A stretch of DNA of 64,000 nt from Macrostomum lignano (Eukaryota). The notes beneath the pieces were generated by a model, which did no database searches, had not been told where the DNA came from, and saw nothing but the letters and a program-made list of their open reading frames with translations. Of this stretch, positions 13,601 through 63,323 are shown one piece after another. The DNA lies in NCBI GenBank assembly GCA_002269645.1, contig NIVC01000103.1, forward strand, positions 617,393 to 681,392, in the 5' to 3' direction. The translations under genes were made by a program, and so were the position numbers. Numbering within the stretch: position 1 is the first letter of the stretch; each line of letters begins with the position of its first letter.

Positions 13601-14510
13601 CTCTCATGCCTTATAAATTGATAGCTGACCAGACCATGCAGTCTATCTTGCATCTCGAAAAAGGTGCCATGTGCCATATATCTCCAAAACTTACCCCATA
13701 ACTCAAAGATCTCTTGATCTTTCTACTTCTCTGCTCTCAATTCTCATTTCTCCTTTACTATATAGCACGCACTCTTCTCTCGTGTCATCTTCTCTCGATC
13801 TCTCTCTCATCTTTCAATATGTACTTGATGTATCTGATATGTTATATGTATTCTTTTCTATCCCCTCGCCTGCACTCTGATCTCATATTTACCCCAACGT
13901 GAGGAATCAGGAATAAGAATTTGAGCTTGAGATTAAGAAATTGGCAAAACATTAGCAAAAGCTGGGTATACCTGCACATCAGTTCCACTCTCATGCCTTA
14001 TAAATTGATAGCTGACCAGACCATGCAGTCTATCTTGCATCTCGAAAAAGGTGCCATGTGCCACATATCTCCAAAACTTACCCCATAACTCAAAGATCTC
14101 TTGATCTTTCTACTTCTCTGCTCTCAATTCTCATTTCTCCTTTACTATATAGCACGCACTCTTCTCTCGTGTCATCTTCTCTCGATCTCTCTCTCATCTT
14201 TCAATATGTACTTGATGTATCTGATATGTTATATGTATTCTTTTCTATCCCCTCGCCTGCACTCTGATCTCATATTTACCCCAACGTGAGGAATCAGGAA
14301 TAAGAATTTGAGCTTGAGATTAAGAAATTGGCAAAACATTAGCAAAAGCTGGGTATACCTGCACATCAGTTCCACTCTCATGCCTTATAAATTGATAGCT
14401 GACCAGACCATGCAGTCTATCTTGCATCTCGAAAAAGGTGCCATGTGCCATATATCTCCAAAACTTACCCCACAACTCAAAGATCCCTTGATCTTTCTAC
14501 TTCTCTGCTC
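10676..14510 (+). repeat. 387-bp tandem array, right arm (~10 near-identical units)
   Basis: Identical short ORFs start at 10962, 11349, 11736, 12123, 12510, 12897, 13284, 13671 and 14058 (step 387). Confidence 0.98.
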
Positions 14511-15599
14511 TCTGCTTTTACAACAATTAAGAAAAGAAACTCGATTTTTACTGAGCCCCATGCAACATCCTGTAGCCTCTGGATGCGCCCCTGCTGGCAC
14601 ATGATAGCCGCGTAAATGCATATTTAAAGCAACTCGGTGTTGTAGTTATGCACTCAGGCTCGTCGCCATGGATTTTATGGTGGGTGACAAAGCCAAGATT
14701 TCTACTACATGTAAATGTACACGACGAAATTCCTACACGTACATTACTATCAGAATCCGTGTTGTCAGCACTCATTTCAGCGCCGCAGGTACTCATTTTA
14801 GCGCCGCAGGCACTCATTTTAGCGCCACAGGTACTCATTTTTAGCTCCGCAGCCACTCATTTTTAGCTCCGCAGCCACTCATTTTTGCGCCACAGGCCTC
14901 ATTGTATATAGACAAATTTCCACTTACAAGCTTTAATTTAAACTGAAGAAAATGGTAACAAAACTGGTATAAAATAGTCTATTTTTATAAATGACTGAAT
15001 GGCCCTTAGCAGCTAATAACATTTTGCTTTTAGAGCGTAGTATATCTTTATTAATTCATCATTTTTTGTACAACTCGTATATCCGGAAAGTAGTTAGTTA
15101 GTAGTTAGTAGTAGTTAGATAGTAGATAGTAGGATCTCTAGTAGGATACTAAAAGTAGTATGAGCGAAACATGTGCACTATAGTTTAGGGACATACACTA
15201 GCATAATGTTGTAAGGTCGCAATTCATCATTATATTTTAAAGATGGCCCGAAGAAATGGTCCTTTTCCACTCACACGTCCGATTTCTTTTCCAGATGGAA
15301 CCTGCTAACTTTAGTGCTGCAGCTGCCGCCCCTGCCGCAAAAATAGAAAATAGAATGTCTTAGAATACAATGGAATAGAACGTAATAGAATAGAATGAGA
15401 AATAGAAAATTTCCAGATACAAAATATTGGAAGAAGTTTAAGAACCGATTTTACAGATACTAAAAATCAGTGTTGCGTTGAATGCAAAACGGTTTATCAG
15501 GGATCAAGTATGCTACAGTTTACATATCGACATTGTCATATTGGCATTGTTAAACACTAAATGTCAAGATGGCGCGAAATCTTGGCGACTAATGACTGA

Positions 15600-15897
15600 C
15601 AACAACAACAAGTTACGCCCCAGGGTCGAGGTTGGGCATCACAGGTCGCGCCCCAGAGCACGGGAGCGGAGAAAGGCCGGTCCACCGGCCTGGTCGGGGG
15701 CGCCAGCATCGGCCAGCAGGCAGTCCGGATACCGCCGAGTGCGCGCCTGCTCGATGACTCACCGAAGGGCCAGGATCTGCGTAACAGTGCCGCGTCTTGG
15801 CCGGAACCCGTTCTGCTCGGTCCGCAGGTAGGGATCCAGCACGGGCTGCAACGGGGTAAGCAGGAGCCGGTTGAACAGCTTCGCGGCGATGGACATT
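15600..15897 (-). pseudogene. 5'-truncated, internally deleted LINE (RTE-like) copy with apparent 3' end
   Basis: Minus strand reads MSIAAKLFNRLLLTPLQPVLDPYLRTEQNGFRPRRGTVTQILALR*VIEQAR (early RT domains, in-frame TGA at 15759-61). It runs directly into TRRYPDCLLADAG...ALGRDL* and then a (TTG)n tail at 15600-15611. Confidence 0.85.
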
Positions 15898-16259
15898 ACT
15901 AATGATTGAGTCATACAACAAAGAAGAGTAGATAGGACATAAAATAGAGATACACAGTGAAAGTAGCATGACTGAATGACCTGGAGGAGGGTGTGATAAA
16001 AAGGGTGATTCTGGATGGGCAATTGTAAAAGAGCAAATCTAGACGGGCGAATCTAAGTAAAATCATAAGTCATTGTCAAATGTTAACATTGCAATAAGTG
16101 TGTAAAAGAAGAAAACAAATGCAATACACAATGAAGTCGTTAAAGTAAACTATAACTTAATTATAACAACGTGTATTTAGTAGAAAATGGAACGATAAAC
16201 TGTCAACAAACAGTGATCTAAATGGAAGTACACCTGATTGAAAAATAATCAATAACAAA

Positions 16260-16545
16260 AGTATAAAAGGTAACGAAATAAGTGCTCTTTGGCTCCATTA
16301 ATCAAAACAGTTTAGCGCCAGTTTATAAACTGAGTGACAGTTCATCACTGCATTAAACTGAATTAATTAACGTTAACAGGTCCGCTACGTGTAAGCAGAG
16401 CACATGGACCCAGGAATGATACAGCTGAGCAGCGAATTCACAGCACACTTGAGCTATTGTGTGCAAGTGAGGTTAAAAATGACATCTATTGGCACAGCAA
16501 TTTTTAATTACCACTTTATACGATAATTTTAATGATTGCAAGTGC
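16260..16545. repeat. Third, partial copy of the shared 3' trailer, downstream of the ZnF-CXC gene
   Basis: gtataaaaggtaacgaaata...gacatctattggcacagcaattttt matches ~18019-18267 and ~19851-20100. Confidence 0.93.
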
Positions 16546-16647: not shown

Positions 16648-17466
16648 CTAATCAGCAAATCGATTGCTTTTTGGGGAAGAGGACACCAGGTTTGGATCAA
16701 ATTTAGTTACTTTAACTTCATGTGACGATTTCCGTCTGCGAATAACGGGTTGTGGAACTATTGTGAGAGGAACAATTGCTTTAGGCTTGAGAGGAATAGG
16801 AACTGGGCCGATTGCAGCGGGGAATTTTTTTCCTGGAGATTTTTTTAAATTTCCTAGTGAGCATCTAGGAATACAATTGGCAATTTCTTTTGTTGATGTA
16901 GCACAAGGCAGTCTTGGTGCACCACAGTTGCACCCAGAAAATGTGCAATGCCGATCAGATTGCTTAGGACTAGATGCCGCAGTAGAAGTTGAGGCTGCAA
17001 CAGGTTGTGAAGCTGCACGGAGTGGAGCAACGTTGTCTGTCTCGCTTATTTCGTAATTATAAACCAGATGTTGAATGTCCAGGACTACTTGATCGAATGG
17101 AGCATAGTGGATGGGCACTTCTTTTACAACTGCCAAGTCGCGAAGCTCTGCCAGACGTACGGAAGCTTGTTTTCTCATTCGCTTAGTAGCAGCCCGACCT
17201 GCCAGGTCTTTTCTACGACTTGGAGTTTGAAATTCGGAAGCATGGTTGTTTCGAAAGTGCATTCTAGGGCAAGAAATCATATCCTGGCAGAGAGGGCAGA
17301 GAGCCACAGACTTGGCCTTCGAATTGGCTTTAGACAGATCAATCATGGCCTGAATCTGCTCATCAGTTGTGGTAGGGTGAAACTTTTCCCGATGTCGCCA
17401 CAATTGGTACGTTCTACCAGTCCATGAGCACAAAAAGCAACAGATTTTTGCGTGTTTATTAGGCAT
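16648..17466 (-). CDS. 272-aa protein with two atypical C2H2 zinc fingers and a C-terminal CXC-like Cys cluster; paralogue of the N-terminus of the SET protein
   Basis: Single open frame from ATG 17466. Fingers CFLC-x11-H-x4-H and CPLC-x9-H-x4-H are followed by a basic helix (GRAATKRMRKQASVRLAEL) and later C-x4-C-x-C-x6-C-x9-C-x3-C. Confidence 0.75.
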   Translation of the reverse strand: MPNKHAKICCFLCSWTGRTYQLWRHREKFHPTTTDEQIQAMIDLSKANSKAKSVALCPLCQDMISCPRMHFRNNHASEFQTPSRRKDLAGRAATKRMRKQASVRLAELRDLAVVKEVPIHYAPFDQVVLDIQHLVYNYEISETDNVAPLRAASQPVAASTSTAASSPKQSDRHCTFSGCNCGAPRLPCATSTKEIANCIPRCSLGNLKKSPGKKFPAAIGPVPIPLKPKAIVPLTIVPQPVIRRRKSSHEVKVTKFDPNLVSSSPKSNRFAD

Positions 17467-17816
17467 GGCTAAAACAGTTGTTGAATAATTGGATTGGTGT
17501 TTTAGAAGACTTAATTTCAATGCGTCGAGTGGCTAGCTGAAATAAGTATAGCATTGTTTTTTTAGTAACTGAAGAAAGTCAGTAGCAAAAGTTACATCTA
17601 GTTAAAGCTGATTGAATTATGGGGACAGGGTTGCACTGTATAATATTAGTAAGTATAACTAAATAACCATAGGGTACCATTATACAAAAAGAGATTAGTA
17701 TGACTGAATGGCCTGGAGAAAAGATAACAGCACTCCTGGCTGAGGGGTCCGTATCAAGTATGACATCAAGACTGATCAAGTATTCGATGCTGACTTCTTA
17801 TAGATAGCGCAAAGTT

Positions 17817-18406
17817 TAGGCCTACAGCTAGGGTCTTAAGTCGATTCTAAGGTGTCGATTCTATGGATTTGAGAATGGCAATCGGGATCGAAAACTGAGT
17901 CCTAACTAATATTGACGACTTAAAAATGAGAAAAAGCAACCAACATATCGTTTAATAACACCATAACGGGCGAAAATGTCAACTTAACGGCAGTTTAATT
18001 TTCATGCAATGAAGTGTAGTATAAAAGGTAACGAAATAAATAAGTGCTCTTTGGCTCCGTTAATCAAAACAATTTAGCGCCAGTTTATAAACTGAGTGAC
18101 AGTTCATCACTGCATTAAACTGAATTAATTAACGTTAACAGGTCCGCTACGTGTAAGCAGAGCACATGGACCCAGGAATGATACAGCTGAGCAGCGAATT
18201 CACAGCACACTTGAGCTATTGTGTGCAAGTGAGGTTAAAAATGACATCTATTGGCACAGCAATTTTTGAATAATTTTATTGCAAGTGCTTTGGAAACAGC
18301 CGACACAATAAATCACTGTGTAATTGAAGTGTTCAGCTAACTAAAAAATTTAAACTTGCTCAAAAAGTATCTTCTGAATCATCCGATTCAGACGCTGAAG
18401 ACTCAG
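17817..18406. repeat. ~580-bp direct repeat, copy 1 (copy 2 at 19664-20239); includes the last ~15 codons and 3' trailer of the KDZ gene
   Basis: Near-identical to 19664-20239 apart from a 14-bp local duplication; both end in ...gacgctgaagactcag. Confidence 0.95.
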
Positions 18407-18471: not shown

Positions 18472-19470
18472 TTAAGAGTTTAGCCACGGAAACTTTTGCA
18501 AACACTCTTCATCTCGTTCACCATAATCATAAAGCAACTCAATTCCCTTGGGAATATTATGTAATGCAAAAAATCCTATTCGGCTTGTGTGGCGTCCAAT
18601 GTCTTTGCAAGGTGATATGACACTAGGAACCAAGTTTGGGTTCAGTCGACTATGATTAATATAGCGACCTACAGAATCAGTGAGGGTAGCGTCTTCGCAT
18701 AATGATTTTGAACCATAAAAATAGAAAAAGGCGAATGCGGGCGAATCTCCTTCGCGAGATCGCTTTTCTTCCCTAGCCGCCCCTTCTTTTTTGGATAAAA
18801 CTGCTCCACCATAGAAACAGACGAATGACTTCGCCTTGATATTCTCATCAGAAAACAGTCCATAACCCTTCTCACCCGCTAACTGAACTGTAACTTTTGC
18901 CGGAAGAAGTTTTGAGGCTTTTGTATAGATTCGGAGACAAGACTGTTTACCAGCCCGCGACTCTTGTTCTCTGTGGGAGGATATACAAAGATATTTTTAG
19001 GTTTATACAACCGTTTACATGTCTGATCAAATCTTGAAAAGCAGGATAGGCAATAACATTACTCACCTCTCGTGCAATCCCTGTTTTTCGTTCTCGTAAC
19101 TTGAATCCGGATACCGTGGCAAAGGCTGGTCGGCAATAAAACACCAGTACAGTTCTCCGAATCGCCGCAGAGCACGTTTTCTCGCCAACCTGATAGCTGG
19201 TTGTCCAGTTAATAAGGAGTTAAGACGCCTGTAATCGCCCGCATGACATTTAGCGTAGTGATCTCGCAAATTTACAGCAAACTGATCACATAGCGCGCAT
19301 AATTTTACATCTGACTTTCTGGACCAACGAAGATATTGAATTATGCAACTTGCTCTTTTAGCGTCTAAAGCATGCTTTTTAGTTGCATGCAAAAGAAGTC
19401 GATCAGCTCGAGCACTATAGGTACTTAAACCAGGAAGACACAGAGGGCACTCGTACTTTTCAGTCGTCAT
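18472..19470 (-). CDS. 300-aa zinc-finger + SET-domain lysine methyltransferase, PR-Set7/SETD8 (KMT5A)-like; exons 19470-19067 and 18970-18472
   Basis: The GT-AG intron 19066-18971 (gtgagt...cctcccacag, 96 nt, phase 2) joins the frames (404+499=903 nt). Exon 2 translates GEKGYGLFS...FVCFYGG...AAREE...FFYFYGSKSLCEDAT...GRYINHS...FFALHNIPKGIELLYDYGERDEECLQKFPWLNS*, colinear with the SETD8 SET domain (GKGRGV, VEYHG, KKREA, YYFQYLSKTYCVDAT, GRLINHS, ELLYDYGDRS, HPWL). Confidence 0.93.
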
Positions 19471-19663: not shown

Positions 19664-20239
19664 TAGGACTACAGCTAGGGTCTTGAGTCGATTCTATGGA
19701 TTTGAGAATGGCAATCGGGATCGAAAACTGAGTCCTAACTAATATTGACGACTTAAAAATGAGAAAAAGCAACCAACATATCGTTTAATAACACCATAAC
19801 GGGCGAAAATGTCAACTTAACGGCAGTTTAATTTTCATGCAATGAAGTGTAGTATAAAAGGTAACGAAATAAATAAGTGCTCTTTGGCTCCGTTAATCAA
19901 AACAATTTAGCGCCAGTTTATAAACTGAGTGACAGTTCATCACTGCATTAAACTGAATTAATTAACGTTAACAGGTCCGCTACGTGTAAGCAGAGCACAT
20001 GGACCCAGGAATGATACAGCTGAGCAGCGAATTCACAGCACACTTGAGCTATTGTGTGCAAGTGAGGTTAAAAATGACATCTATTGGCACAGCAATTTTT
20101 GAATAATTTTATTGCAAGTGCTTTGGAAACAGCCGACACAATAAATCACTGTGTAATTGAAGTGTTCAGCTAACTAAAAAATTTAAACTTGCTCAAAAAG
20201 TATCTTCTGAATCATCCGATTCAGACGCTGAAGACTCAG
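19664..20239. repeat. ~580-bp direct repeat, copy 2 (native 3' end of the KDZ transposase gene)
   Basis: Matches 17817-18406. Confidence 0.95.
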
Positions 20240-22704
20240 TCGCCGACTCAGTTGGCGAGTCGTTGCTAATAGGAGGAACATTTTCAATGCTTTGTTCTGC
20301 GCCGCCCAAAATGAGTCGAAAATATTCTGCCCTTGCTGGAACGTCAAGATTTACAACTCTTTCTAAAATTGATCGAAATAGTTTTCGAAACTGAGCCGCC
20401 AAACCAGCCTGATTATCTAGACTCTTGCAAACCATGTCCATTTTTACAATAAAGTCATACCATTCCTCAGATACGATATGCAGTTCCTCATTCACTCTGT
20501 CGTACTTATGATAGAGATCGATTGCACGCCGACGGAAACGGACAGAAGTAGCTGATTCAGATAAACCATCGTACTTTGAACTATTTGGCTTCCGATACTG
20601 ATCAAAAGAACCCCGGGTCTCTTCCGGCAGACGATTAATATCAGCTTTCATTTCTGAAGTCAAACCTTGTACACGGCGCAAGCAAGCTCTGTTATGACCT
20701 TGGCCCATATTTAGTCCAGACTGTCGCAGCCAATGTTCTCTGAGAACTGCAAGCGAACGAATATTAGATAGAAGGTCGTTTTCAGAGTTTTCTACTGCGC
20801 CTATAAGAGAGTTCTGATGCCACTGACGGCCGAGATTCCGAATTTGAACCTCCGAAAGTACTAAGCTTCCGTCTAAAATTCCGGAAGCTTGCTGTATTCG
20901 TGCATCATCAAGAAGTGAGTTCATTTCCGAAGACATGTTTTTTATCGTACTGTCCAAAAGTCTGAGACGTTGCTGGAACCACTGGGGTGTGTTAAACAAT
21001 TGATTCGCATTGAAATGAAACAGAATTTGAGACATACAGGTGCTCCTACGATCAGGTCGCATGTACTTTAGTGAATGCCCATATGGGCGAAGTTGTGCCC
21101 AAGCTCTCTCTGTGTTCTCGCCATCACACAAGCCCGCTCCAGGAGTGACACGCACAGAGAACCTTCTTTGGCAGCTTGGTTTGTGGCCAAGTGCGTGGAA
21201 TGCATTGATGGCACATGAAGAGGCCTGTACGTTAGCACCAGATTTAGTAACTGCGGATTGTACGCGAGCTGAAACGCGGCAGCCTGCAGTGAGATGTGAG
21301 AAAAATGTATGTACTTTATTTTGATCCCGCTAAATTATACGGACATAGTATGCAAAAGATGCACTTACCAACGTCATAGATAAGAAGCAATTTCTTCGAT
21401 ACAGACGTGTCTCTTAGAAAATGCTCAAGGCACTGTTCTATGTAGCAGAACCGCTCTCCTGTCGTAGTAATGTTACAACCATTCAATAGACGATTGTGCC
21501 GGCAAAAAAGTCCAAAAAAGCCATACACATCATGTCTACCAGCACCTCGGGATGGTGGCTCGAGCGCCCCAGCTTTCCAACTTGGACAGTTTTGTTCTTC
21601 TAAGCGATTTTTTGGCGCGTCTGCTTTGACATCTACATTCACTAATGGAACAGGAAGCGGACGACCATCTGACGGAGTTAGAGCTTGCCTGAATCCCATT
21701 GAAGAAAATCTTTGCCAGCCGAAAAGCGCATCAGCACAAACAACAGTCTGGCGATCATTATGCTGATCGGGACACAAGAGACACGACTTGGGCCATTTTG
21801 CTGAGCGGATCTGTAATTGTCTAAATTTTAGCAGAACACAGTGGCGTTGCAGACGTTGATACAAACTTGATGCTAATTTATCTCTGCAGATTCCTTGGCC
21901 AACAGTAGCACCTAAAAACAGGGCTTTGATTGCCCTGTGAGCCGGTAGTCGACCTACAGTAGTCAAATTGTCGAGAAGTGTTAATAAACTTATGGCGAAA
22001 TAGGCTGTGCAGTCTGTGGCGGTTGCGGTTGCATCATAAGACGGGAAGTAACCCATTGAGAGAAGCGCATCCACTTTGTCACATGAACTACACGTAAACA
22101 TCTGAGCTTGAACGATTCCCGACAAATCGATTAGCTCAACAGTTGATGCAGCCGACAATTCGCGAGCCTCTCTGCTTGCCACACAACAGAAAAGTGCAGC
22201 AACCATGGGCACGTGCACTGGATCTGCAAACATAAGCGTCTCAGAATTCCACTGTTCAAATTTGTGTGGTGCAAAATCACCATGTGTGATTTCTTTACAG
22301 TCTTCACAGAAATCCAGCCTACAAGTGACACACCGATAAATTCCAGGCGCATCACTGCAACGAATGCATGAACCCAAGTTGAAATAATTTTCATACGCAT
22401 TGCTGTGAAGATCCGAAAACATGGAATGATCCTCCCACTCAGTTTCTTCAGGCGGATTTGAAGGTTCAGTAGAATTTTCAGGCGGCATTTCGGCTGCATT
22501 ATCAGGCATTTCAGGAAAAAAATAATTCCCTACCGACTGATCCTGATGAGAACCATAAGCAGAGCTTGAGCTAGGACGACGGGTGGCACCAAAACCAGAA
22601 GATTTCTGGAGCTTTCTTGGACGTCCTCGACGGCTTGTCCGCAATACAGCTTCGACATCACTATCAGAATCTGTATTAGAAAACAATGTTCTGCGGCGAG
22701 ACAT
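20193..22704 (-). CDS. KDZ (Kyakuja-Dileera-Zisupton) superfamily transposase, 808 aa; exons 22704-21369 and 21283-20193
   Basis: The intron 21368-21284 (gtaagt...cactgcag, 85 nt, phase 1) restores YDVG|C and fuses the two track ORFs (1336+1091=2427 nt, no stop). Motifs: AT-hook RRGRPRK; Cys cluster CxxC-x8-CxxC-x4-CxxC-x4-H-x5-H; LLSMGYFP; CLLCP; CADALF; FCRH; GERFCY; YDVGC; FHALGHKPSCQ; GAGLCDGENTERAWAQL; acidic tail. Confidence 0.9.
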
Positions 22705-25385
22705 GACCTGAAATGTTTTAATGCAAATTGTAATTCAAGAGTATGTATGTATGTATGTATGACTTCAATATTATACTATTAGACGTATTTATTCATACAG
22801 ATTCATACATATCTGAACACACATTTGTCCAAAAATGACACTTTGGATTTGTATGATATAATGAATAAACACTGATGTAAATCATTGTTATAAATTACTT
22901 TTGTACCTACCAAAACCAATACGTAGTAACTTTAAGCTTATTATGTATGCATTACTATTCTGATATATTTGTCTACTTTATAGCATATAAAAATGTGTGA
23001 GTGCAATGTATGTGAAAAAAGATTCAGTATTAATTATTATATTTTTATATATTTATATTTTATCTATTCTTTAATCCTTTCTCTTACCTTTCCTTTCTCT
23101 TATTGCCTATTCATTCTTCTTTCTACTCTTATCTGCCCCTCAGCCTTTATCTGGCTCTCTCTCATATACTCTCCCAGTTGTGCTCTTAAGGGACATAGTA
23201 CTCTCATAGTTGTTTCATTCTATGGCCTACTTGTTGACTGCTTTGATTGCATCATCTTTCTAGCCAATTTTTCAGTCTTGAGAAAAACTACATGTATACA
23301 TTTTTAGCTCCACAGTGCCACATATCTGATATTGTGGCTAACCTAGGGCTGATGCTTTAAAGTTTGTTTAATTAGTAACTAATCATATATATAAACCTTT
23401 GCCTAAGAAAATAATACAAGTCAATGAAATAGTCTTTTTAAAAATGAATGATTATTTAAAAGGACCCTAAACTAACAAGAATACAATCCACTTTGGTAAC
23501 AGCCACTTCGGTAAAGCAGATTTATGACTTTTAGCACTTTTTCTTTATGTTAATTTTTTAGTAACTATTAATTAAATTAATCATTAACTTGTTTAGTACT
23601 TTATTGCTGATTACCATTCAATTTTTTCTGATTAGGATATATTATACATGTAATTTGTTTCAACTTGAACAGATAGAATATATAACAGCGGAGACTTAGA
23701 GAGATCAATGAAAGTAATTAATGACAAATAAATTAAAGTAAATACTGAAATTTCACATTTCTAACTCAAAGTAATTCTAATTACACAATACTTTGGTAAT
23801 TACAAGTTTTATAGGTTGTATCATAACATATCTTGAGTATCAAGCGCACCTGGAAATTTAAATAGATTGATCAAAACACATTAAAACAATTTTATCATTG
23901 TTGGCTAAATCATTGTCTAGGCCTAAAACATTATTTTTTGTCTCAAAAACTATTTGAAATTATTTTTTAGAGCACATTAAGATACATATTGTTATATCTC
24001 CTCCCTTGTTACCAAAATGGACTGTTACCACTAACAATACATTAAATACAAGTGCTAAAAATCCTAGGAGCTAAAGTGGCTAAAATAAAGGAGAAAGTCT
24101 CAAAAATCTTCCAAATAAAGCCAGGAGATAAAGGAGATAAAGGAAGGTGTAGGCACCCTGCATTTATCCACTTATTCTATTGAATCAAATATACTAAATA
24201 TCTATACTAGGCCTATACTATTTTTGTATAGCATGTTCTCTAAGGGCTGCAGGGCAAAGCATTCAAAAAGGACAAAAAAGTGAAAAAAATTAATCATGAA
24301 TATCATGGAAGAATATAGATATAGCCTATAGACTATAGTGTATAGCCTTGCAAGGCTTGCAATTGCAATTTAGCCTTGCAATTTTAACCATAAGCTTATA
24401 GTTAAAATTGCCTTGGTTGACTTGCAATAGTTTTGGGCCACTTATTCATCTTGTTAATATTAGTGATAAGTCTTGGCCAGGGGGTGCATGACCAAGATGG
24501 CCACACACCAAGATGGCCACAGTTTATTAAAATGTCTAAATAGATAATATGATGCTCATTTCCTTATTATAATTGGTCACAATTGGTCTTAAGGTATGTC
24601 TGTGAGAGCTGTGTCTTATTTGCCCTATAACTATAAGCCAAGTTTTAACATGAAGATTAAATAAAGATCAAGATCCACTATTTGCAAACTCAATATTTTA
24701 AGTTAAAAAGGCAATAAATATATGCTCGAACAATTTAAACCCACCTGCAACTTGGCTAGATACTAAATTTTCCAAAAGGGCTTTCCAGACATGAGTCCAA
24801 AAATTGAAGTAAGCAGAAGCAAGTAACTGTATAATTATCCACGAAACTAAAAATGAAGTGTCTGTATGTATGCAAGTATATCTAATAGTAAGTAAGTAAG
24901 CTTGGCTCAGGCAAGAAGCCTGTTTGGCCAGTATATGTCAGTGTATTTATTATTAATAATAATTCAATAGATAAACTAGATATGAGCGGCTAATTCGGCA
25001 ATAATATAGTATTTGAAAGAGTGTTAATATTTTTTTCTACGAAACTTCAAACGATCTTTAACGATAAACCCGCCGCGGAAGCCATGCAAATTTCGCGACA
25101 GAATCCCCAAATCAGCATTTGAAGTTGCTTACTATCATTTTAAAGCTATCGCTGCTGTAGTAAGTACTTTAGTCACTTTTTGATGTATTAATTTCCATTG
25201 CCAATGAATGGGGCTCAAGAGTATACTAATAGTAGACTTGTTTTATAAACGATTAGAACATTTGTCCAAAAACGACACTTTTGATATTTTAATCCCAAAT
25301 GGATAAAAATGAAAATCATTGCTACGAAAACTATGATTAATGTGCATGAAAATACAAAATAGAATAAAAAAATACTATGAGATAT

Positions 25386-28300
25386 CTCAAATCGGCGCTG
25401 GAAAGCTCAAATTGGCGCGGAAAGCTCAAATTGGCGCCGAAAGTCAAATTTGGCGCCAGGATCACCAAATCGGCGCCAGTATCGCCAAATCAGCGCCGGA
25501 ATGCTGAAATCAGCGCTAAAAAGCCCGGACCAGCGATGGAAAGCTCAAATCGGCGCTGGAAAGCTCAAATTGGCGCGGAAAGCTCAAATTGGCGCCAAAA
25601 GTCAAATTTGGCGCCAGGATCACCAAATCGGCGCCAGTATCGCCAAATCAGCGCTGGAATGCTGAAATCAGCGCTAAAAAGCCCGGACCAGCGCTGGAAA
25701 GCTCAAATCGGCGCTGGAAAGCTCAAATTGGCGCGGGAAAGCTCAAATTGGCGCCGAAAGTCAAATTTGGCGCCAGGATCACCAAATTTGGCGCCAGTAT
25801 CGCCAAATCAGCGCCGGAATGCTGAAAACAGCGCTAAAAAGCCCGGACCAGCGCTGGAAAGCTCAAATTGGCGCGGAAAGCTTAAATTGGCGCCGAAAGC
25901 CAAATTTGGCGCCAGGATCACCAAATCGGCGCCAGTATCGCCAAATCAGCGCCGGAATGCTGAAAACAGCGCTAAAAAGCAGCCGGAAAGCTCCAGCGCT
26001 GGAAAGCTCAAATTGGCGCGGAAAGCTTAAATTGGCGCCGAAAGCCAAATTTGGCGCCAGGATCACCAAATCGGCGCCAGTATCGCCAAATCAGCGCCGG
26101 AATGCTGAAAACAGCGCTAAAAAGCCCGGACCAGCGCTGGAAAGCTCAAATCGGCGCTGGAAAGCTCAAATTGGCGCGGAAAGCTCAAATTGGCGCCGAA
26201 AGTCAAATTTGGCGCCAGGATCACCAAATCGGCGCCAGTATCGCCAAATCAGCGCCGGAATGCTGAAAACAGCGCTAAAAAGCCCGGACCAGCGCTGGAA
26301 AGCTCAAATTGGCGCGGAAAGCTCAAATTGGCGCCGAAAGTCAAATTTGGCGCCAGGATCACCAAATCGGCGCCAGTATCGCCAAATCAGCGCCGGAATG
26401 CTGAAAACAGCGCTAAAAAGCCCGGACCAGCGCTGGAAAGCTCAAATTGGCGCGGAAAGCTCAAATTGGCGCCGAAAGTCAAATTTGGCGCCAGGATCAC
26501 CAAATCGGCGCCAGTATCGCCAAATCAGCGCCGGAATGCTGAAAACAGCGCTAAAAAGCCCGGACCAGCGCTGGAAAGCTCAAATCGGCGCTGGAAAGCT
26601 CAAATTGGCGCGGAAAGCTCAAATTGGCGCCGAAAGTCAAATTTGGCGCCAGGATCACCAAATCGGCGCCAGTATCGCCAAATCAGCGCTGGAATGCTGA
26701 AAACAGCGCTAAAAAGCCCGGACCAGCGCTGGAAAGCTCAAATCGGCGCTGGAAAGCTCAAATTGGCGCGGAAAGCTCAAATTGGCGCCGAAAGTCAAAT
26801 TTGGCGCCAGGATCACCAAATCGGCGCCAGTATCGCCAAATCAGCGCCGGAATGCTGAAAACAGCGCTAAAAAGCCCGGACCAGCGGAGCTCAAAGCGCT
26901 GGAAAGCTCAAATTGGCGCGGAAAGCTCAAATTGGCGCCGAAAGTCAAATTTGGCGCCAGGATCACCAAATCGGCGCCAGTATCGCCAAATCAGCGCCGG
27001 AATGCTGAAAACAGCGCTAAAAAGCCCGGACCAGCGCTGGAAAGCTCAAATTGGCGCGGAAAGCTTAAATTGGCGCCGAAAGCCAAATTTGGCGCCAGGA
27101 TCACCAAATCGGCGCCAGTATCGCCAAATCAGCGCCGGAATGCTGAAAACAGCGCTAAAAAGCCCGGACCAGCGCTGGAAAGCTCAAATTGGCGCGGAAA
27201 GCTTAAATTGGCGCCGAAAGCCAAATTTGGCGCCAGGATCACCAAATCGGCGCCAGTATCGCCAAATCAGCGCCGGAATGCTGAAAACAGCGCTAAAAAG
27301 CCCGGACCAGCGCTGGAAAGCTCAAATTGGCGCGGAAAGCTTAAATTGGCGCCGAAAGCCAAATTTGGCGCCAGGATCACCAAATCGGCGCCAGTATCGC
27401 CAAATCAGCGCCGGAATGCTGAAAACAGCGCTAAAAAGCCCGGACCAGCGCTGGAAAGCTCAAATTGGCGCGGAAAGCTTAAATTGGCGCCGAAAGCCAA
27501 ATTTGGCGCCAGGATCACCAAATCGGCGCCAGTATCGCCAAATCAGCGCCGGAATGCTGAAAACAGCGCTAAAAAGCCCGGACCAGCGCTGGAAAGCTCA
27601 AATTGGCGCGGAAAGCTCAAATTGGCGCCGAAAGCCAAATTTGGCGCCAGGATCACCAAATCGGCGCCAGTATCGCCAAATCAGCGCCGGAATGCTGAAA
27701 ACAGCGCTAAAAAGCCCGGACCAGCGCTGGAAAGCTCAAATTGGCGCGGAAAGCTTAAATTGGCGCCGAAAGCCAAATTTGGCGCCAGGATCACCAAATC
27801 GGCGCCAGTATCGCCAAATCAGCGCCGGAATGCTGAAAACAGCGCTAAAAAGCCCGGACCAGCGCTGGAAAGCTCAAATCGGCGCTGGAAAGCTCAAATT
27901 GGCGCGGAAAGCTCAAATTGGCGCCGAAAGTCAAATTTGGCGCCAGGATCACCAAATCGGCGCCAGTATCGCCAAATCAGCGCCGGAATGCTGAAAACAG
28001 CGCTAAAAAGCCCGGACCAGCGCTGGAAAGCTCAAATCGGCGCTGGAAAGCTCAAATTGGCGCGGAAAGCTCAAATTGGCGCCGAAAGTCAAATTTGGCG
28101 CCAGGATCACCAAATCGGCGCCAGTATCGCCAAATCAGCGCGGAATGCTGAAAACAGCGCTAAAAAGCCCGGACCAGCGCTGGAAAGCTCAAATTGGCGC
28201 GGAAAGCTTAAATTGGCGCCGAAAGCCAAATTTGGCGCCAGGATCACCAAATCGGCGCCAGTATCGCCAAATCAGCGCCGGAATGCTGAAAACAGCGCTA

Positions 28301-31028
28301 AAAAGCCCGGACCAGCGCTGGAAAGCTCAAATTGGCGCGGAAAGCTTAAATTGGCGCCGAAAGCCAAATTTGGCGCCAGGATCACCAAATCGGCGCCAGT
28401 ATCGCCAAATCAGCGCCGGAATGCTGAAAACAGCGCTAAAAAGCCCGGACCAGCGCTGGAAAGCTCAAATCGGCGCTGGAAAGCTCAAATTGGCGCGGAA
28501 AGCTCAAATTGGCGCCGAAAGCCAAATTTGGCGCCAGGATCACCAAATCGGCGCCAGTATCGCCAAATCAGCGCTGGAATGCTGAAATCAGCGCTAAAAA
28601 GCCCGGACCAGCGCTGGAAAGCTCAAATCGGCGCTGGAAAGCTCAAATTGGCGCGGAAAGCTCAAATTGGCGCCGAAAGTCAAATTTGGCGCCAGGATCA
28701 CCAAATCGGCGCCAGTATCGCCAAATCAGCGCTGGAATGCTGAAACAGCGCTAAAAAGCCCGGACCAGCGCTGGAAAGCTCAAATCGGCGCTGGAAAGCT
28801 CAAATTGGCGCGGAAAGCTCAAATTGGCGCCGAAAGTCAAATTTGGCGCCAGGATCACCAAATCGGCGCCAGTATCGCCAAATCAGCGCCGGAATGCTGA
28901 AAACAGCGCTAAAAAGCCCGGACCAGCGCTGGAAAGCTCAAATTGGCGCGGAAAGCTAAATTGGCGCCAAAAGCCAAATTTGGCGCCAGGATCACCAAAT
29001 CGGCGCCAGTATCGCCAAATCAGCGCCGGAATGCTGAAAACAGCGCTAAAAAGCCCGGACCAGCGCTGGAAAGCTCAAATTGGCGCGGAAAGCTCAAATT
29101 GGCGCCGAAAGCCAAATTTGGCGCCAGGATCACAAATCGGCGCCAGTATCGCCAAATCAGCGCCGGAATGCTGAAAACAGCGCTAAAAAGCCCGGACCAG
29201 CGCTGGAAAGCTCAAATCGGCGCTGGAAAGCTCAAATTGGCGCGGAAAGCTCAAATTGGCGCCGAAAGTCAAATTTGGCGCCAGGATCACCAAATCGGCG
29301 CCAGTATCGCCAAATCAGCGCTGGAATGCTGAAATCAGCGCTAAAAAGCCCGGACCAGCGCTGGAAAGCTCAAATCGGCGCTGGAAAGCTCAAATTGGCG
29401 CGGAAAGCTCAAATTGGCGCCGAAAGTCAAATTTGGCGCCAGGATCACCAAATCAGCGCCGGAATGCTGAAAACAGCGCTAAAAAGCCCGGACCAGCGCT
29501 GGAAAGCTCAAATCGGCGCTGGAAAGCTCAAATTGGCGCGGAAAGCTCAAATTGGCGCCGAAAGTCAAATTTGGCGCCAGGATCACCAAATCGGCGCCAG
29601 GATCCCTTAATCAGCGCTGGAATGCTGAAATCAGCGCTAAAAAGCCCGGACCAGCGCTGGAAAGCTCAAATCGGCGCTGGAAAGCTCAAATTGGCGCGGA
29701 AAGCTCAAATTGGCGCCGAAAGTCAAATTTGGCGCCAGGATCACCAAATCGGCGCCAGTATCGCCAAATCAGCGCCGGAATGCTGAAATCAGCGCTAAAA
29801 AGCCCGGACCAGCGCTGGAAAGCTCAAATCGGCGCTGGAAAGCTCAAATTGGCGCGGAAAGCTCAAATTGGCGCCGAAAGTCAAATTTGGCGCCAGGATC
29901 ACCAAATCGGCGCCAGTATCGCCAAATCAGCGCCGGAATGCTGAAAACAGCGCTAAAAAGCCCGGACCAGCGCTGGAAAGCTCAAATCGGCGCTGGAAAG
30001 CTCAAATTGGCGCGGGAAAGCTCAAATTGGCGCCGAAAGTCAAATTTGGCGCCAGGATCACCAAATTTGGCGCCAGTATCGCCAAATCAGCGCCGGAATG
30101 CTGAAAACAGCGCTAAAAAGCCCGGACCAGCGCTGGAAAGCTCAAATCGGCGCTGGAAAGCTCAAATTGGCGCGGAAAGCTCAAATTGGCGCGAACGTCA
30201 AATTTGGCGCCAGGATCACCAAATCGGCGCCAGGATCCCTTAATCAGCGCTGGAATGCTGAAATCAGCGCTAAAAAGCCCGGACCAGCGCTGGAAAGCTC
30301 AAATCGGCGCTGGAAAGCTCAAATTGGCGCGGGAAAGCTCAAATTGGCGCCGAAAGTCAAATTTGGCGCCAGGATCACCAAATCGGCGCCAGTATCGCCA
30401 AATCAGCGCCGGAATGCTGAAAACAGCGCCAAAAAGCCCGGACCAGCGCTGGAAAGCTCAAATCGGCGCTGGAAAGCTCAAATTGGCGCGGGAAAGCTCA
30501 AATTGGCGCCGAAAGTCAAATTTGGCGCCAGTATCGCCAAATCAGCGCCGGAATGCTGAAAACAGCGCTAAAAAGCCCGGACCAGCGCTGGAAAGCTCAA
30601 ATCGGCGCTGGAAAGCTCAAATTGGCGCGGAAAGCTCAAATTGGCGCCGAAAGTCAAATTTGGCGCCAGGATCACCAAATCGGCGCCAGGATCCCTTAAT
30701 CAGCGCTGGAATGCTGAAATCAGCGCTAAAAAGCCCGGACCAGCGCTGGAAAGCTCAAATCGGCGCTGGAAAGCTCAAATTGGCGCGGAAAGCTCAAATT
30801 GGCGCCGAAAGTCAAATTTGGCGCTAGGATCACCAAATCGGCGCCAGTATCGCCAAATCAGCGCCGGAATGCTGAAAACAGCGCTAAAAAGCCCGGACCA
30901 GCGCTGGAAAGCTCAAATCGGCGCTGGAAAGCTCAAATTGGCGCGGAAAGCTCAAATTGGCGCCGAAAGTCAAATTTGGCGCCAGGATCACCAAATCGGC
31001 GCCAGGATCCCTTAATCAGCGCTGGAAT
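25386..31028. repeat. GC-rich satellite with 139/158-bp units built from ~19-20-bp subunits (aaagctcaaattggcgc core), ~37 units
   Basis: ORF starts step by 158 (27918-28076, 29552-29710-29868). The 139-bp variant lacks one 19-bp subunit. Confidence 0.98.
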
Positions 31029-31293
31029 GTGCCAACGGGCGTAGAAGTGGCAGCATATATCAGCTTGCTACTTTTGGGCGCCAATTTTAATTTACCGGCG
31101 CCAATTTTAGCCTTTCGGCGCCCATTTTAGCGCCCTGGCAAGGTCATTGCATTTAGTTCTCACGCAATGGAGCCGAAAAAAGAGTTTTTTTTCTTTTTTG
31201 AATTAGTGCCATGTATCTTGACAACCAATGCGAGTCAAGTTCTGGCGTCTGCTTCTCCACAGCCCCGTAATGGCATATCCTAATAATTGTGGG

Positions 31294-31695
31294 CTGGCCC
31301 GCGCTAAGGGAGCCCACCCCACCGTGGGGCGGACCCCGCTAACGGGCTATTTTTAGCGTGGGATGGGCTCCGCTAACGGGCGGCCATAAACTGAAAACGA
31401 AACGCGTTCTGGGAGTTTTTTAAATTTGGAAGAGTTGGGAAAGACAAAGAGCCGTCTTCATCCAGCATACATTAATATACGAGAAATGAGTCACGGATGT
31501 GCAGCGTTTTCAGCTAGCTTCATTGCTAGTACAGTGCTAGTACGCTAGTGCGCACTACCGTCCACACTCACCCCACACCCACCCCTCTCCGCTTGTGGGC
31601 TGGCTTCCGCTAAGGGAGCCCATCCCACCGTGGGCTGGGTACCGTTAGCGGGCTATTTTTTGCGTGGGATGGGTCCCGCTAGCGGGAAGCCGTTA
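31294..31695. repeat. Pair of ~95-bp diverged GC-rich direct repeats (31294-31385, ~31595-31695)
   Basis: tgtgggctggc..cgctaagggagccca.cccaccgtggg...cgggctattttt.gcgtgggatggg.. occurs twice; the first copy is also at ~48535-48630. Confidence 0.8.
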
Positions 31696-63100: not shown

Positions 63101-63323
63101 GCAGGACTTTGTCATCCGGCAGGACATGGCCTGCGGCTCCACTATCGGGCCGATTCTAGCCGCTAAAGTTGGCCTGCCAACTATTGATGTTGGTTCGCCA
63201 ATATTCGGCATGCACAGCATCCGGGAGACTGGAGCGGCTGCTGCCCCTGGCCAGGGTGTGCAACTGTTCTCCGCCTTTTTCAAGCACTTCCCAGCTCTGC
63301 GGGAGGCTATGGAGACTCAGTGA
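60147..63323 (+). CDS. DNPEP: Aspartyl aminopeptidase (peptidase family M18), 480 aa; exons 60147-60464, 60886-61089, 62403-63323
   Basis: Motifs [75 protein letters not shown] and MHSIRE. Both introns are GT-AG phase 0; total 1443 nt. Confidence 0.95.
60545..60720. repeat. Intronic ~25-bp purine minisatellite (gagggtgaggagagggtggggaaat)
   Basis: Visible tandem units in DNPEP intron 1. Confidence 0.9.
61135..61975. repeat. Intronic 30-bp minisatellite (gtgtctatgggtgggttgtgtgggtccttt)
   Basis: Units align at 30-nt steps in DNPEP intron 2. Confidence 0.95.
62125..62330. repeat. Intronic 21-bp minisatellite (gcagtgtctgtagatgtgctg)
   Basis: A 7-aa repeat (CAGSVCR) appears in the ORF translation upstream of the true exon 3. 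Confidence 0.93.

What the first reader, a model, noticed from the sequence alone, without database searches (positions are those of the whole stretch)
18472..19470. Hidden SET8-like exon fused to tandem zinc fingers, with catalytic residues retained
SEEN: exon 2 (18970-18472) has no ATG, so the ORF track misses it, but canonical splice sites join it in frame to ORF 19063-19470. It retains the SAM-binding GxG and RYINHS motifs, the FYGG tyrosine (human Y245), the RE glutamate (E259), ELLYDYG (Y334 switch and Y336) and the terminal PWL. ESTABLISHED: Tyr at the switch position favours monomethylation. SEEN: the usual SETD8 N-terminus is replaced by C-x2-C-x16-H-x4-H and C-x2-C-x9-H-x4-H fingers, and I see no canonical TD-type PIP degron. 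The C270-equivalent is Ala and D338 is Glu. INFERENCE: a DNA-targeted, cell-cycle-uncoupled methyltransferase, possibly with shifted substrate preference.
Basis: partly seen in the sequence, partly recalled or inferred. Interest (0 to 1): 0.86.

Follow-up and report, generated by a model that had tools for sequence, protein, structure and literature searches.

The report
Transposon-carried SET8-like methyltransferase in a flatworm
The two-exon zinc-finger/SET8-like gene is real and looks catalytically intact, but it is already annotated in the flatworm Macrostomum lignano, and it is not a remodelled host SETD8: it travels inside a multi-copy KDZ-type DNA transposon next to the transposase gene, an unusual case of an animal transposon carrying its own lysine methyltransferase.

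Summary
Exon 1 (19470-19067), a 96-nt GT..AG intron and exon 2 (18970-18472) give a 300-aa protein. It has two C2H2-like fingers and a C-terminal SET domain whose closest solved relatives, by sequence and by predicted fold, are human SETD8/KMT5A.

The exon is not hidden. The same 300-aa protein is in GenBank as a Macrostomum lignano hypothetical protein, from a transcriptome-derived annotation.

The context changes the interpretation. The gene lies directly downstream, on the same strand, of a complete Kyakuja-Dileera-Zisupton (KDZ) transposase gene. It is followed by an ORF with the same two-finger module ("ZnF-X"). This three-gene set recurs in a second family in the same genome (about 45% transposase identity, 35-41% ZnF-SET identity).

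Both families are multi-copy. Each has a sharp 5'-CAG terminus with unrelated flanks in different copies. One copy lacks exactly the SET cassette, which is bounded by 553-bp direct repeats.

Best reading: a transposon accessory gene for a zinc-finger-targeted lysine monomethyltransferase. Substrate, role and the element's 3' end are not established. This is a new variant of a known kind (transposons carrying chromatin modifiers).

The parts
19067..19470 (-). ZnF-SET exon 1. It holds the start codon and the two C2H2-like fingers: finger 1 at residues 8-33 (19449-19372) and finger 2 at residues 58-76 (19299-19243).
   Evidence: All eight zinc ligands are invariant in five homologous modules. A profile of the module matches CTCF C2H2 fingers at E 5.8e-9.
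18971..19066 (-). 96-nt intron, GTGAGT...CCCACAG, with in-frame stop codons. If retained, the product would be a 135-aa finger-only protein.
   Evidence: The spliced product equals the annotated GenBank protein, and that annotation is transcriptome-derived.
18472..18970 (-). ZnF-SET exon 2: linker, SET8/KMT5A-like SET domain (Pfam match at 18867-18520), C-terminal PWL and the TAA stop.
20193..22704 (-). KDZ (Kyakuja-Dileera-Zisupton) transposase gene, 808 aa. Exons 22704-21369 and 21283-20193, with an 85-nt GTAAGT..CAG intron. The N-terminus is B-box/CxC1-like.
   Evidence: On the spliced protein, Pfam KDZ scores 1.6e-31 (110 bits) and covers profile positions 3-216 of 217.
16648..17520 (-). 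'ZnF-X': an intact 290-aa ORF (first ATG at 17466) with the same two-finger N-terminal module as ZnF-SET but no SET domain. It has no Pfam match and is not in the public gene set.
   Evidence: Homologues lie in the family-B loci L005 (frameshifted) and L011 (intact, 205 aa).
19687..20239 (-). 553-bp direct repeat, copy 1. It starts 47 nt before the KDZ stop codon and contains an AATAAA.
17854..18406 (-). 553-bp direct repeat, copy 2, 100% identical to copy 1. It starts 66 nt after the ZnF-SET stop. Together with copy 1 it brackets a 1,833-bp SET cassette that is absent from locus L007.
16260..16510 (-). Third, partial copy (about 250 bp, 97-98% identical) of the same repeat, downstream of ZnF-X.
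25386..31029 (-). 5.6-kb array of a 20-nt unit (higher-order periods 138/158 nt). It lies inside the mobile unit, between the 5' terminus and KDZ. The same satellite sits in the same position and orientation in family B (L005 594-2306).
31370..31393 (-). 5' terminus of the mobile unit (5'-CAGTTTATGGCCGCCCGTTAGCGG). Upstream flanks are unrelated in four family-A copies.
   Evidence: The family-B terminus 5'-CAGAGCATATTCC... has two unrelated flanks.
46973..48639 (-). Second copy of the element's 5' end (terminus plus a short 20-mer array). It is cut off by the assembly gap at 46491-46972.
8003..15584 (.). Downstream region shared by all family-A copies that reach it. It comprises a unique 1.07-kb segment U (15584-14513), a 387-bp satellite (14512-10676), a 249-bp junction, an inverted satellite (10426-9049) and inverted U' (9048-8003). 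Whether this is part of the element is unresolved.

Best explanation
The ZnF-SET gene is an accessory gene of a KDZ-superfamily (Kyakuja-like) DNA transposon of Macrostomum lignano.

The unit reads: 5'-CAG terminus, then a 20-mer satellite array, then the KDZ transposase, then ZnF-SET, then ZnF-X. Each gene is followed by the same repeat, which carries a poly(A) signal.

Shown: the protein joins a two-C2H2-finger module, shared with the neighbouring ZnF-X protein, to a SET8/KMT5A-type SET domain. That domain keeps the SAM-binding, catalytic and Tyr-switch residues.

Inferred: it is an active lysine monomethyltransferase. The finger module brings it to the element's own DNA or chromatin (for example the subterminal 20-mer repeats) or to the transposase complex. 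There it methylates a histone tail lysine, with H4K20 the default candidate.

Inferred purpose: to benefit the element. It could favour 53BP1/NHEJ-type repair of excision and integration breaks, as SET8 does at double-strand breaks. Alternatively it could set a chromatin state that counters silencing.
For: Adjacency:
- KDZ and ZnF-SET are adjacent on the same strand in the window and in the allied loci.
- A second family (KDZ about 44-50% identical, ZnF-SET 35-41%, ZnF-X 35%) keeps all three genes together.

Multi-copy:
- Family-A KDZ genes are on at least 6 contigs, and family B is on at least 8.
- Consecutive GenBank accessions show KDZ, ZnF-SET and a 98-aa gene side by side.

Mobility:
- The 5' boundary is identical to the nucleotide, with unrelated flanks in 4 family-A and 2 family-B copies.
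- Two copies with different flanks (window and L010) run collinear from the terminus into the SET gene.
- A 5'-CA terminus without TIRs fits the published description of Kyakuja (PMC12730594).

Expression:
- The annotation is a transcriptome assembly.
- KDZ and ZnF-SET share a transcriptional-unit name prefix in both families.
- An older gene model fuses KDZ to ZnF-SET.

Enzyme integrity. ORFs and motifs stay intact although synonymous sites are saturated between families.

Precedent:
- SET genes in HarbingerS and MuDR transposons, and TET/JBP genes in KDZ transposons (PMC12730594).
- SET8 activity at double-strand breaks is needed for 53BP1 recruitment (PMC4253490).
Against: - The 3' terminus and target-site duplications were not found. 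Every copy shares all downstream sequence as far as the loci reach.
- Copies within a family are almost identical (0 and about 8 substitutions over 11 kb). M. lignano is a hidden polyploid with a redundant assembly, so some 'copies' are duplicated loci rather than transpositions.
- One copy (L007) lacks the SET cassette, so the gene is dispensable for persistence of the unit.
- No activity, substrate or DNA-binding data exist.
- Substrate-groove positions differ from human SETD8 (C270A, D338E, H347F).
- The finger module could not be modelled (pLDDT 52).
- ZnF-X is absent from the public gene set.
Confidence: 0.65

Rival explanations
1. Domesticated or immobile KDZ-derived gene cluster. On this view the transposase, ZnF-SET and ZnF-X now serve the host, for example in satellite or heterochromatin biology. 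Their copies spread by segmental duplication and polyploidy, not by transposition.
For: - All copies sit between satellite arrays and share more than 8 kb of downstream sequence.
- Within-family identity is about 99.9-100%.
- No 3' end, TIR or TSD was found.
- Both families keep intact ORFs.
Against: - Six copies have unrelated sequence starting at exactly the same terminal nucleotide, which segmental duplication does not predict.
- Two diverged families co-exist in multiple copies in one genome.
- Near-identical copies are also what recent transposition gives.
Confidence: 0.15
2. An ordinary host SETD8 paralogue (a zinc-finger-targeted chromatin writer) that merely lies next to a transposon.
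For: The protein is intact, SETD8-like and expressed. A homologue on a short Logan contig (P0006) has no KDZ within 611 nt upstream.
Against: - The KDZ/ZnF-SET/ZnF-X linkage is kept across about 45% transposase divergence and on every contig examined.
- The gene lies inside the terminus-bounded repeat unit.
- No copy without KDZ was found in M. lignano.
Confidence: 0.07
3. A captured host gene fragment that no longer works as an enzyme. It would be either a pseudo-methyltransferase acting only as a binding module, or a passenger in slow decay.
For: - One copy has lost the cassette.
- Several substrate-groove residues differ from SETD8.
- Catalytically dead SET proteins are known (for example SET-24 in C. 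elegans, PMC12886896, listed).
Against: - The protein keeps 28 of 32 family-conserved positions, including every invariant one (Y188, G190, D228, H241, Y284).
- The same positions are kept in the 35-41% identical family-B and Logan homologues.
- No frameshift or stop occurs in any copy.
Confidence: 0.08
4. An active methyltransferase, but with a non-H4K20 or non-histone substrate, such as the transposase itself, another histone lysine or a host repair factor.
For: C270A, D338E and H347F change positions that in human SETD8 lie next to the H4 peptide (mapping; their role is from my own knowledge of the SET8-H4 structures 1ZKK and 3F9W-Z). Human SETD8 is known to have non-histone substrates (own knowledge).
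Against: The overall closest fold and sequence match is SETD8 in complex with H4K20 peptides. The C-terminal PWL helix that forms part of the substrate groove is retained.
Confidence: 0.2

Closest known systems
Human SETD8 / KMT5A / PR-Set7 (H4K20 monomethyltransferase; PDB 1ZKK, 3F9W-3F9Z, 7D1Z)
   Same: - Best sequence and fold match.
- GxG, RE, NHS and ELLYDYG motifs are kept.
- Tyr at the Phe/Tyr switch.
- No pre-SET or post-SET cysteine clusters.
- C-terminal PWL.
   Different: - The N-terminus is two C2H2-like fingers instead of the disordered region carrying the PIP degron.
- C270A, D338E and H347F.
- Multi-copy and transposon-linked.
- Only 300 aa.
- Orthology was not tested, and is unlikely.
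KDZ (Kyakuja-Dileera-Zisupton) transposons carrying TET/JBP dioxygenase genes in basidiomycete fungi (Iyer et al. 2014; PMC12730594)
   Same: - Same transposase superfamily (complete Pfam KDZ domain).
- An epigenetic-modifier gene is carried next to the transposase.
- A 5'-CA terminus without TIRs, as described for Kyakuja.
   Different: - The host is an animal (a flatworm).
- The passenger is a protein lysine methyltransferase, not a DNA-base dioxygenase.
- There is an extra paralogous zinc-finger gene.
- There are large internal satellite arrays.
- The 3' end and TSD are not defined.
HarbingerS and MuDR families of Phytophthora that encode a SET-domain histone methyltransferase (Kojima & Jurka 2014, Repbase Reports, cited in PMC12730594)
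   Same: A DNA transposon encoding a SET-domain protein as an accessory gene.
   Different: Different transposase superfamilies and a different kingdom. I could not inspect those SET sequences, so their subfamily relation to SET8 is unknown.
SETMAR / Metnase (primate SET-mariner fusion)
   Same: A SET methyltransferase is physically coupled to a DNA-transposon protein, with a proposed link to double-strand-break repair.
   Different: SETMAR is a single-copy host gene that captured a transposase. Its SET domain is of a different subfamily (H3K36-directed). Here the coupling is by gene adjacency inside a multi-copy element, not a fusion protein.

Membership tests
SET-domain lysine methyltransferases (Pfam PF00856) | Significant match to the SET profile above the curated cut-off | tested here: met
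   58.9 bits against a cut-off of 22.4, E 7.6e-16, full profile 1-105.
SET8/KMT5A subfamily | Closest solved relatives by sequence and fold are SETD8; C-terminal flank ends in PWL; no pre-SET or post-SET Zn clusters | tested here: met
   (the top 17 fold matches are all SETD8, TM-score about 0.8 normalised to the target). The margin over EZH2 and MLL SET domains in sequence E-value is only about 100-fold.
SET8/KMT5A subfamily | Catalytic and product-specificity residues (Y245, E259, N298-H299, Y334 switch, Y336) | tested here: met
   Y188, E202, N240-H241, Y282 and Y284, from the alignment. The protein keeps 28 of 32 family-conserved columns.
SET8/KMT5A subfamily | Substrate-groove residues of human SETD8 (C270, D338, H347) | tested here: not met
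   They are A213, E286 and F295. The same positions vary in the family-B and Logan homologues.
SET8/KMT5A orthologue (host cell-cycle enzyme) | N-terminal PIP degron and CRL4-Cdt2 regulation; single-copy orthologous locus | tested here: not met
   No PIP or TD[FY][FY] motif. The gene is multi-copy and linked to a transposase. No formal phylogeny against the flatworm's own SETD8 was run.
SET8/KMT5A subfamily | H4K20 monomethylation activity | not testable with these tools
   Needs an enzyme assay.
C2H2 zinc fingers | C-x2-4-C-x12-H-x3-5-H ligand pattern and a profile match | tested here: inconclusive
   - Ligands are present and invariant in 5 homologues, but the spacings are x16 and x9 in this protein. 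The family-B homologue has x12 in finger 1.
- Pfam zf-C2H2 and related families match only below threshold (best 2.9e-4 to 1.9e-5 among members).
- The profile matches CTCF fingers at E 5.8e-9, summed over repeats.
- The structure model is unusable.
KDZ-superfamily DNA transposon | Complete KDZ transposase domain | tested here: met
   110 bits against a cut-off of 26.6, profile positions 3-216 of 217. CxC1 and B-box matches are weak.
KDZ-superfamily DNA transposon | Multiple copies with defined termini and differing flanks | tested here: met
   The 5' terminus is shared to the nucleotide, with 4 (family A) and 2 (family B) unrelated flanks. Genes lie on at least 6 and at least 8 contigs.
KDZ-superfamily DNA transposon | 3' terminus (Kyakuja: ...TG-3') and 7-8 bp target-site duplication | tested here: inconclusive
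   The 3' boundary was not reached in any locus. No inverted repeats were found. One 7-mer match (TCGTTTT) is ambiguous.

The most novel reading that the evidence does not exclude
An animal cut-and-paste transposon carries its own zinc-finger-guided SET8-type histone methyltransferase, plus a paralogous finger-only partner. It would write a methyl mark such as H4K20me1 on chromatin at its own ends or at its excision and insertion sites, steering break repair or escaping silencing. That would be a transposon-encoded histone writer acting in cis. The SET cassette would be a gain/loss module bounded by direct repeats.
Probability: 0.3. Interest if true: 0.8.

Novelty: new variant of a known kind. 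Interest (0 to 1): 0.6.

Why it matters
Transposons that encode enzymes acting on chromatin marks are rare. Known examples are TET/JBP genes in fungal KDZ elements and SET genes in oomycete Harbinger and MuDR elements. In the library I could search, none is reported for animals or for the SET8/H4K20 branch.

If the enzyme is active and acts on the element's own chromatin, this is a tractable case of a mobile element manipulating histone methylation. M. lignano has transgenesis and RNAi, so it can be tested. The case would also offer a natural experiment, because SET-plus and SET-minus copies exist side by side in one genome.

There is a practical consequence for annotation. SET8-like genes in flatworm gene sets should not be assumed to be host H4K20 methyltransferases.

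Tried and rejected
- dN/dS among copies. Family-A copies are 100% identical over 10.9 kb. Five family-B copies differ at about 8 substitution columns in 11.3 kb. Between families, synonymous sites are saturated and dS is undefined (dN 0.64-0.83). No usable estimate resulted.
- Terminal inverted repeats. None were found with seeds of 9-12.
- TSD search with the 5' flanks. It gave only chance-level 6-7-mers. The one exception, TCGTTTT at 25275-25269, is internal to all copies.
- 3' end. I extended with loci anchored on KDZ and on the downstream 98-aa gene. All loci stay collinear into the satellites.
- Cross-family nucleotide or tblastx conservation in the non-coding spacers: none.
- Word-indexed homologue searches with the protein, with a three-member alignment and with KDZ returned almost only M. 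lignano entries. The exhaustive search gave two architecture-sharing homologues.
- Long SET8-like proteins among the hits have no transposase domains.
- P0003 (39% identical) sits among ordinary genes of an unrelated compact genome.
- AlphaFold2 of the finger module gave pLDDT 52, which is unusable.
- Iyer et al. 2014 (PNAS) could not be read. I therefore could not check whether SET-linked KDZ elements were mentioned there.

Full report
**1. What is in the sequence**

Read on the minus strand, ORF 19470-19063 ends at a TGA that overlaps a consensus 5' splice site (AG|GTGAGT). Ninety-six nucleotides downstream lies a pyrimidine-rich acceptor (CCTCCCACAG|). Joining 19470-19067 to 18970-18472 gives a 903-nt CDS and a 300-aa protein. 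The unspliced frame has four stops within the intron, the first being that TGA.

**2. Identity of the protein**

- Pfam finds a complete SET domain (E 7.6e-16).
- The best solved-structure sequences are a dozen SETD8/KMT5A chains (E 4e-13 to 1e-11). They are aligned from the first beta-strand to the C-terminal PWL. EZH2, EHMT, MLL and SETD2 follow.
- An AlphaFold2 model built on 84 SET8-like sequences has pLDDT >90 over residues about 155-300. Its 17 best PDB fold matches are all SETD8.
- From the alignment and the numbering of the 352-aa chain 7d1z_K, the mapping is as follows.
  - Y188 = Y245, and R201-E202 = R258-E259.
  - A213 = C270, and N240-H241-S242 = N298-H299-S300.
  - Y282 = Y334 (the Phe/Tyr switch), and Y284 = Y336.
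  - E286 = D338, F295 = H347, and PWL = P348-W349-L350.
- Of the 32 columns that are at least 80% conserved in 81 other SET8-like proteins, this protein keeps 28, including every invariant one. The four differences are conservative.
- The N-terminus has C-x2-C-x16-H-x4-H and C-x2-C-x9-H-x4-H. No PIP-type motif is present.

**3. It is not hidden**

The exact 300-aa sequence is GenBank 'hypothetical protein BOX15_Mlig001681g4/g17' of Macrostomum lignano, with four accessions on four contigs. The window is 100% identical to contig NIVC01000103.1.

That annotation is a genome-guided transcriptome assembly in which gene ends are set from trans-splicing and poly(A) reads (PMC5730564). The splice model therefore already rests on RNA evidence, although I could not see the reads.

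**4. Context**

Directly upstream on the same strand is a two-exon gene (22704-21369 and 21283-20193). It encodes an 808-aa protein with a complete Kyakuja-Dileera-Zisupton transposase domain (110 bits, profile 3-216 of 217) and weak B-box/CxC1 matches.

Directly downstream is an intact 290-aa ORF (17520-16648, 'ZnF-X'). Its N-terminus has the same two fingers. All eight zinc ligands are invariant across the five modules I could align. A profile of the module matches the H-x4-H C2H2 fingers of CTCF (E 5.8e-9). Pfam matches stay below threshold.

Each of the three genes is followed by the same sequence:
- a 553-bp repeat at 20239-19687, which begins 47 nt before the KDZ stop;
- the same repeat at 18406-17854, 100% identical;
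- a 250-bp copy, 97-98% identical, at 16510-16260.

The repeat contains an AATAAA.

**5. The linkage is conserved and multi-copy**

The exhaustive protein search found only two other proteins with the finger-plus-SET architecture.

One of them, P0005, is M. lignano BOX15_Mlig022522g3. On its contig it again lies downstream of a KDZ gene, with a ZnF-X homologue between them. Identities between the two families are about 44-50% (KDZ), 35% (ZnF-X) and 35-41% (ZnF-SET).

Cluster look-ups show family-A KDZ genes on at least 6 contigs and family-B KDZ genes on at least 8. Consecutive GenBank accessions cover KDZ, ZnF-SET and a 98-aa gene.

In both families KDZ and ZnF-SET share the transcriptional-unit name prefix (Mlig001681, and Mlig022522 or Mlig004599). 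Under the naming rule in PMC5730564, that implies at least one assembled transcript spans both genes; this is an inference. An older model even fuses them into one 1,347-aa protein.

**6. Evidence that the unit is mobile**

Comparing loci shows that similarity begins at exactly the same nucleotide:
- family A: 5'-CAGTTTATGGCCGCC..., at window 31393 and 48639, L007 1767 and L010 1738;
- family B: 5'-CAGAGCATATTCC..., at L005 181 and L011 1980.

The upstream sequence is unrelated in every copy.

From the terminus the copies run collinear through about 370 bp, a 20-mer satellite array, about 2.7 kb, KDZ and the accessory genes. The window and L010 have different flanks, yet both reach the SET gene.

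A 5'-CA end without TIRs, and 7-bp TSDs, is how Kyakuja elements are described (PMC12730594).

I could not find the 3' end. All family-A copies share a 1.07-kb segment, a 387-bp satellite, a 249-bp junction and an inverted copy of the satellite and segment. On NIVC01001431.1 two whole copies lie tail-to-tail around that junction. Family-B copies remain collinear for more than 20 kb.

No TIRs were found, and no convincing TSD.

**7. The SET cassette is gained or lost as a block**

Copy L007 is identical to the window except that one 553-bp repeat plus the 1,280-bp SET segment (1,833 bp in all) is missing. That leaves KDZ, one repeat, then ZnF-X. This is what recombination between the two direct repeats would produce.

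Family B has an analogous 295-bp repeat after KDZ and after ZnF-SET. Gene order differs between the families: KDZ, SET, ZnF-X in A and KDZ, ZnF-X, SET in B.

**8. Selection**

Within families the copies are too alike to test: 0 differences in 10.9 kb for family A, and about 8 substitution columns in 11.3 kb for family B. Family-B proteins are identical except for one residue.

Between families, synonymous sites are saturated. Even so, all ORFs are intact and the catalytic and zinc-ligand positions are kept. That argues for long-term constraint but gives no number.

**9. Interpretation**

Shown:
- an expressed, intact, SET8-type methyltransferase gene with a C2H2-like two-finger N-terminus;
- its location inside a multi-copy, terminus-bounded unit that encodes a KDZ transposase;
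- conservation of that arrangement in two old families.

Inferred:
- the protein is an active monomethyltransferase, because Tyr occupies the switch position, and the SET8 Y334F structures 3F9W-Z concern exactly this product-specificity switch;
- the fingers target it to element DNA, chromatin or the transposase;
- it benefits the element.

A concrete hypothesis follows from precedent. SET8 activity at double-strand breaks is required for 53BP1 recruitment (PMC4253490). A cut-and-paste element that makes breaks could profit from bringing that activity. Countering silencing is the alternative, as is argued for TET/JBP-carrying KDZ elements and SET-carrying Harbinger and MuDR elements (PMC12730594).

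The changes at C270, D338 and H347 leave the substrate open.

**10. Comparison and novelty**

The protein works like SETD8, but it fails the tests for being the host KMT5A orthologue. It has no PIP degron, it is multi-copy, and it is transposon-linked.

The element passes the KDZ tests for transposase, copy number and 5' terminus. The 3' end and TSD remain inconclusive.

Full-text searches pairing the KDZ family names with 'SET domain' or with Macrostomum, and SETD8 with transposase and DNA-transposon terms, found no report of such an element. Iyer et al. 2014 could not be read.

I rate it a new variant of a known kind, of moderate-to-good interest.

Noticed in passing
window 51400-60060: An 8.7-kb stretch that is almost free of T on the plus strand (A 4327, G 2493, C 1790, T 50). 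It is built of AGACAGRC-like units and produces artefactual ORFs of up to 2,897 aa on both strands.
   Followed up: partly
window 8003-15584: A large palindrome. A 387-bp satellite (14512-10676) and a 1.07-kb unique segment are repeated in inverted orientation (10426-9049 and 9048-8003) around a 249-bp non-palindromic junction. The same junction joins two whole KDZ units tail-to-tail on NIVC01001431.1.
   Followed up: partly
window 25269-25285 and 31394-31400: The 7-mer TCGTTTT that flanks the 5' terminus at 31393 recurs just after ...ATCAAAAGTG at 25275-25269. This would define a 6.1-kb 5'-CAG...GTG-3' satellite-bearing element with a 7-bp TSD. However, the same internal sequence is present in copies that have other 5' flanks.
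   Followed up: partly
window 46491-46972 and 46973-48639: A 482-N assembly gap cuts off a second copy of the element's 5' end (terminus plus a short 20-mer array). What lay downstream of it is unknown.
   Followed up: partly
window 7029-7703 (+) and 15759-16066 (-): Reverse-transcriptase fragments of non-LTR type (RVT_1 E 3e-5 for the first). They flank the two arms of the palindrome.
   Followed up: no
window 62130-63323 (+): An ORF with a strong match to M18 aspartyl aminopeptidase (Peptidase_M18, E 1.9e-90). It is probably part of an ordinary host gene.
   Followed up: no
window 5000-5803 and 43483-44803: The same 120-bp tandem repeat (20-bp sub-unit) occurs twice in the window, about 95% identical.
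   Followed up: no
L006 (Logan SRR19430222 contig, 612-1661): A ZnF-SET homologue (349 aa) is encoded as one uninterrupted ORF on a genomic-looking contig that also carries a tRNA-like SINE and a (TATTC)n repeat. It has Phe instead of Tyr at the product-specificity switch (ELLFDYG).
   Followed up: partly
L011 5330-8659 versus L005 ~3806: One family-B copy carries a 3.3-kb insertion between the 20-mer array and KDZ that the other copy lacks. Its nature was not examined.
   Followed up: no
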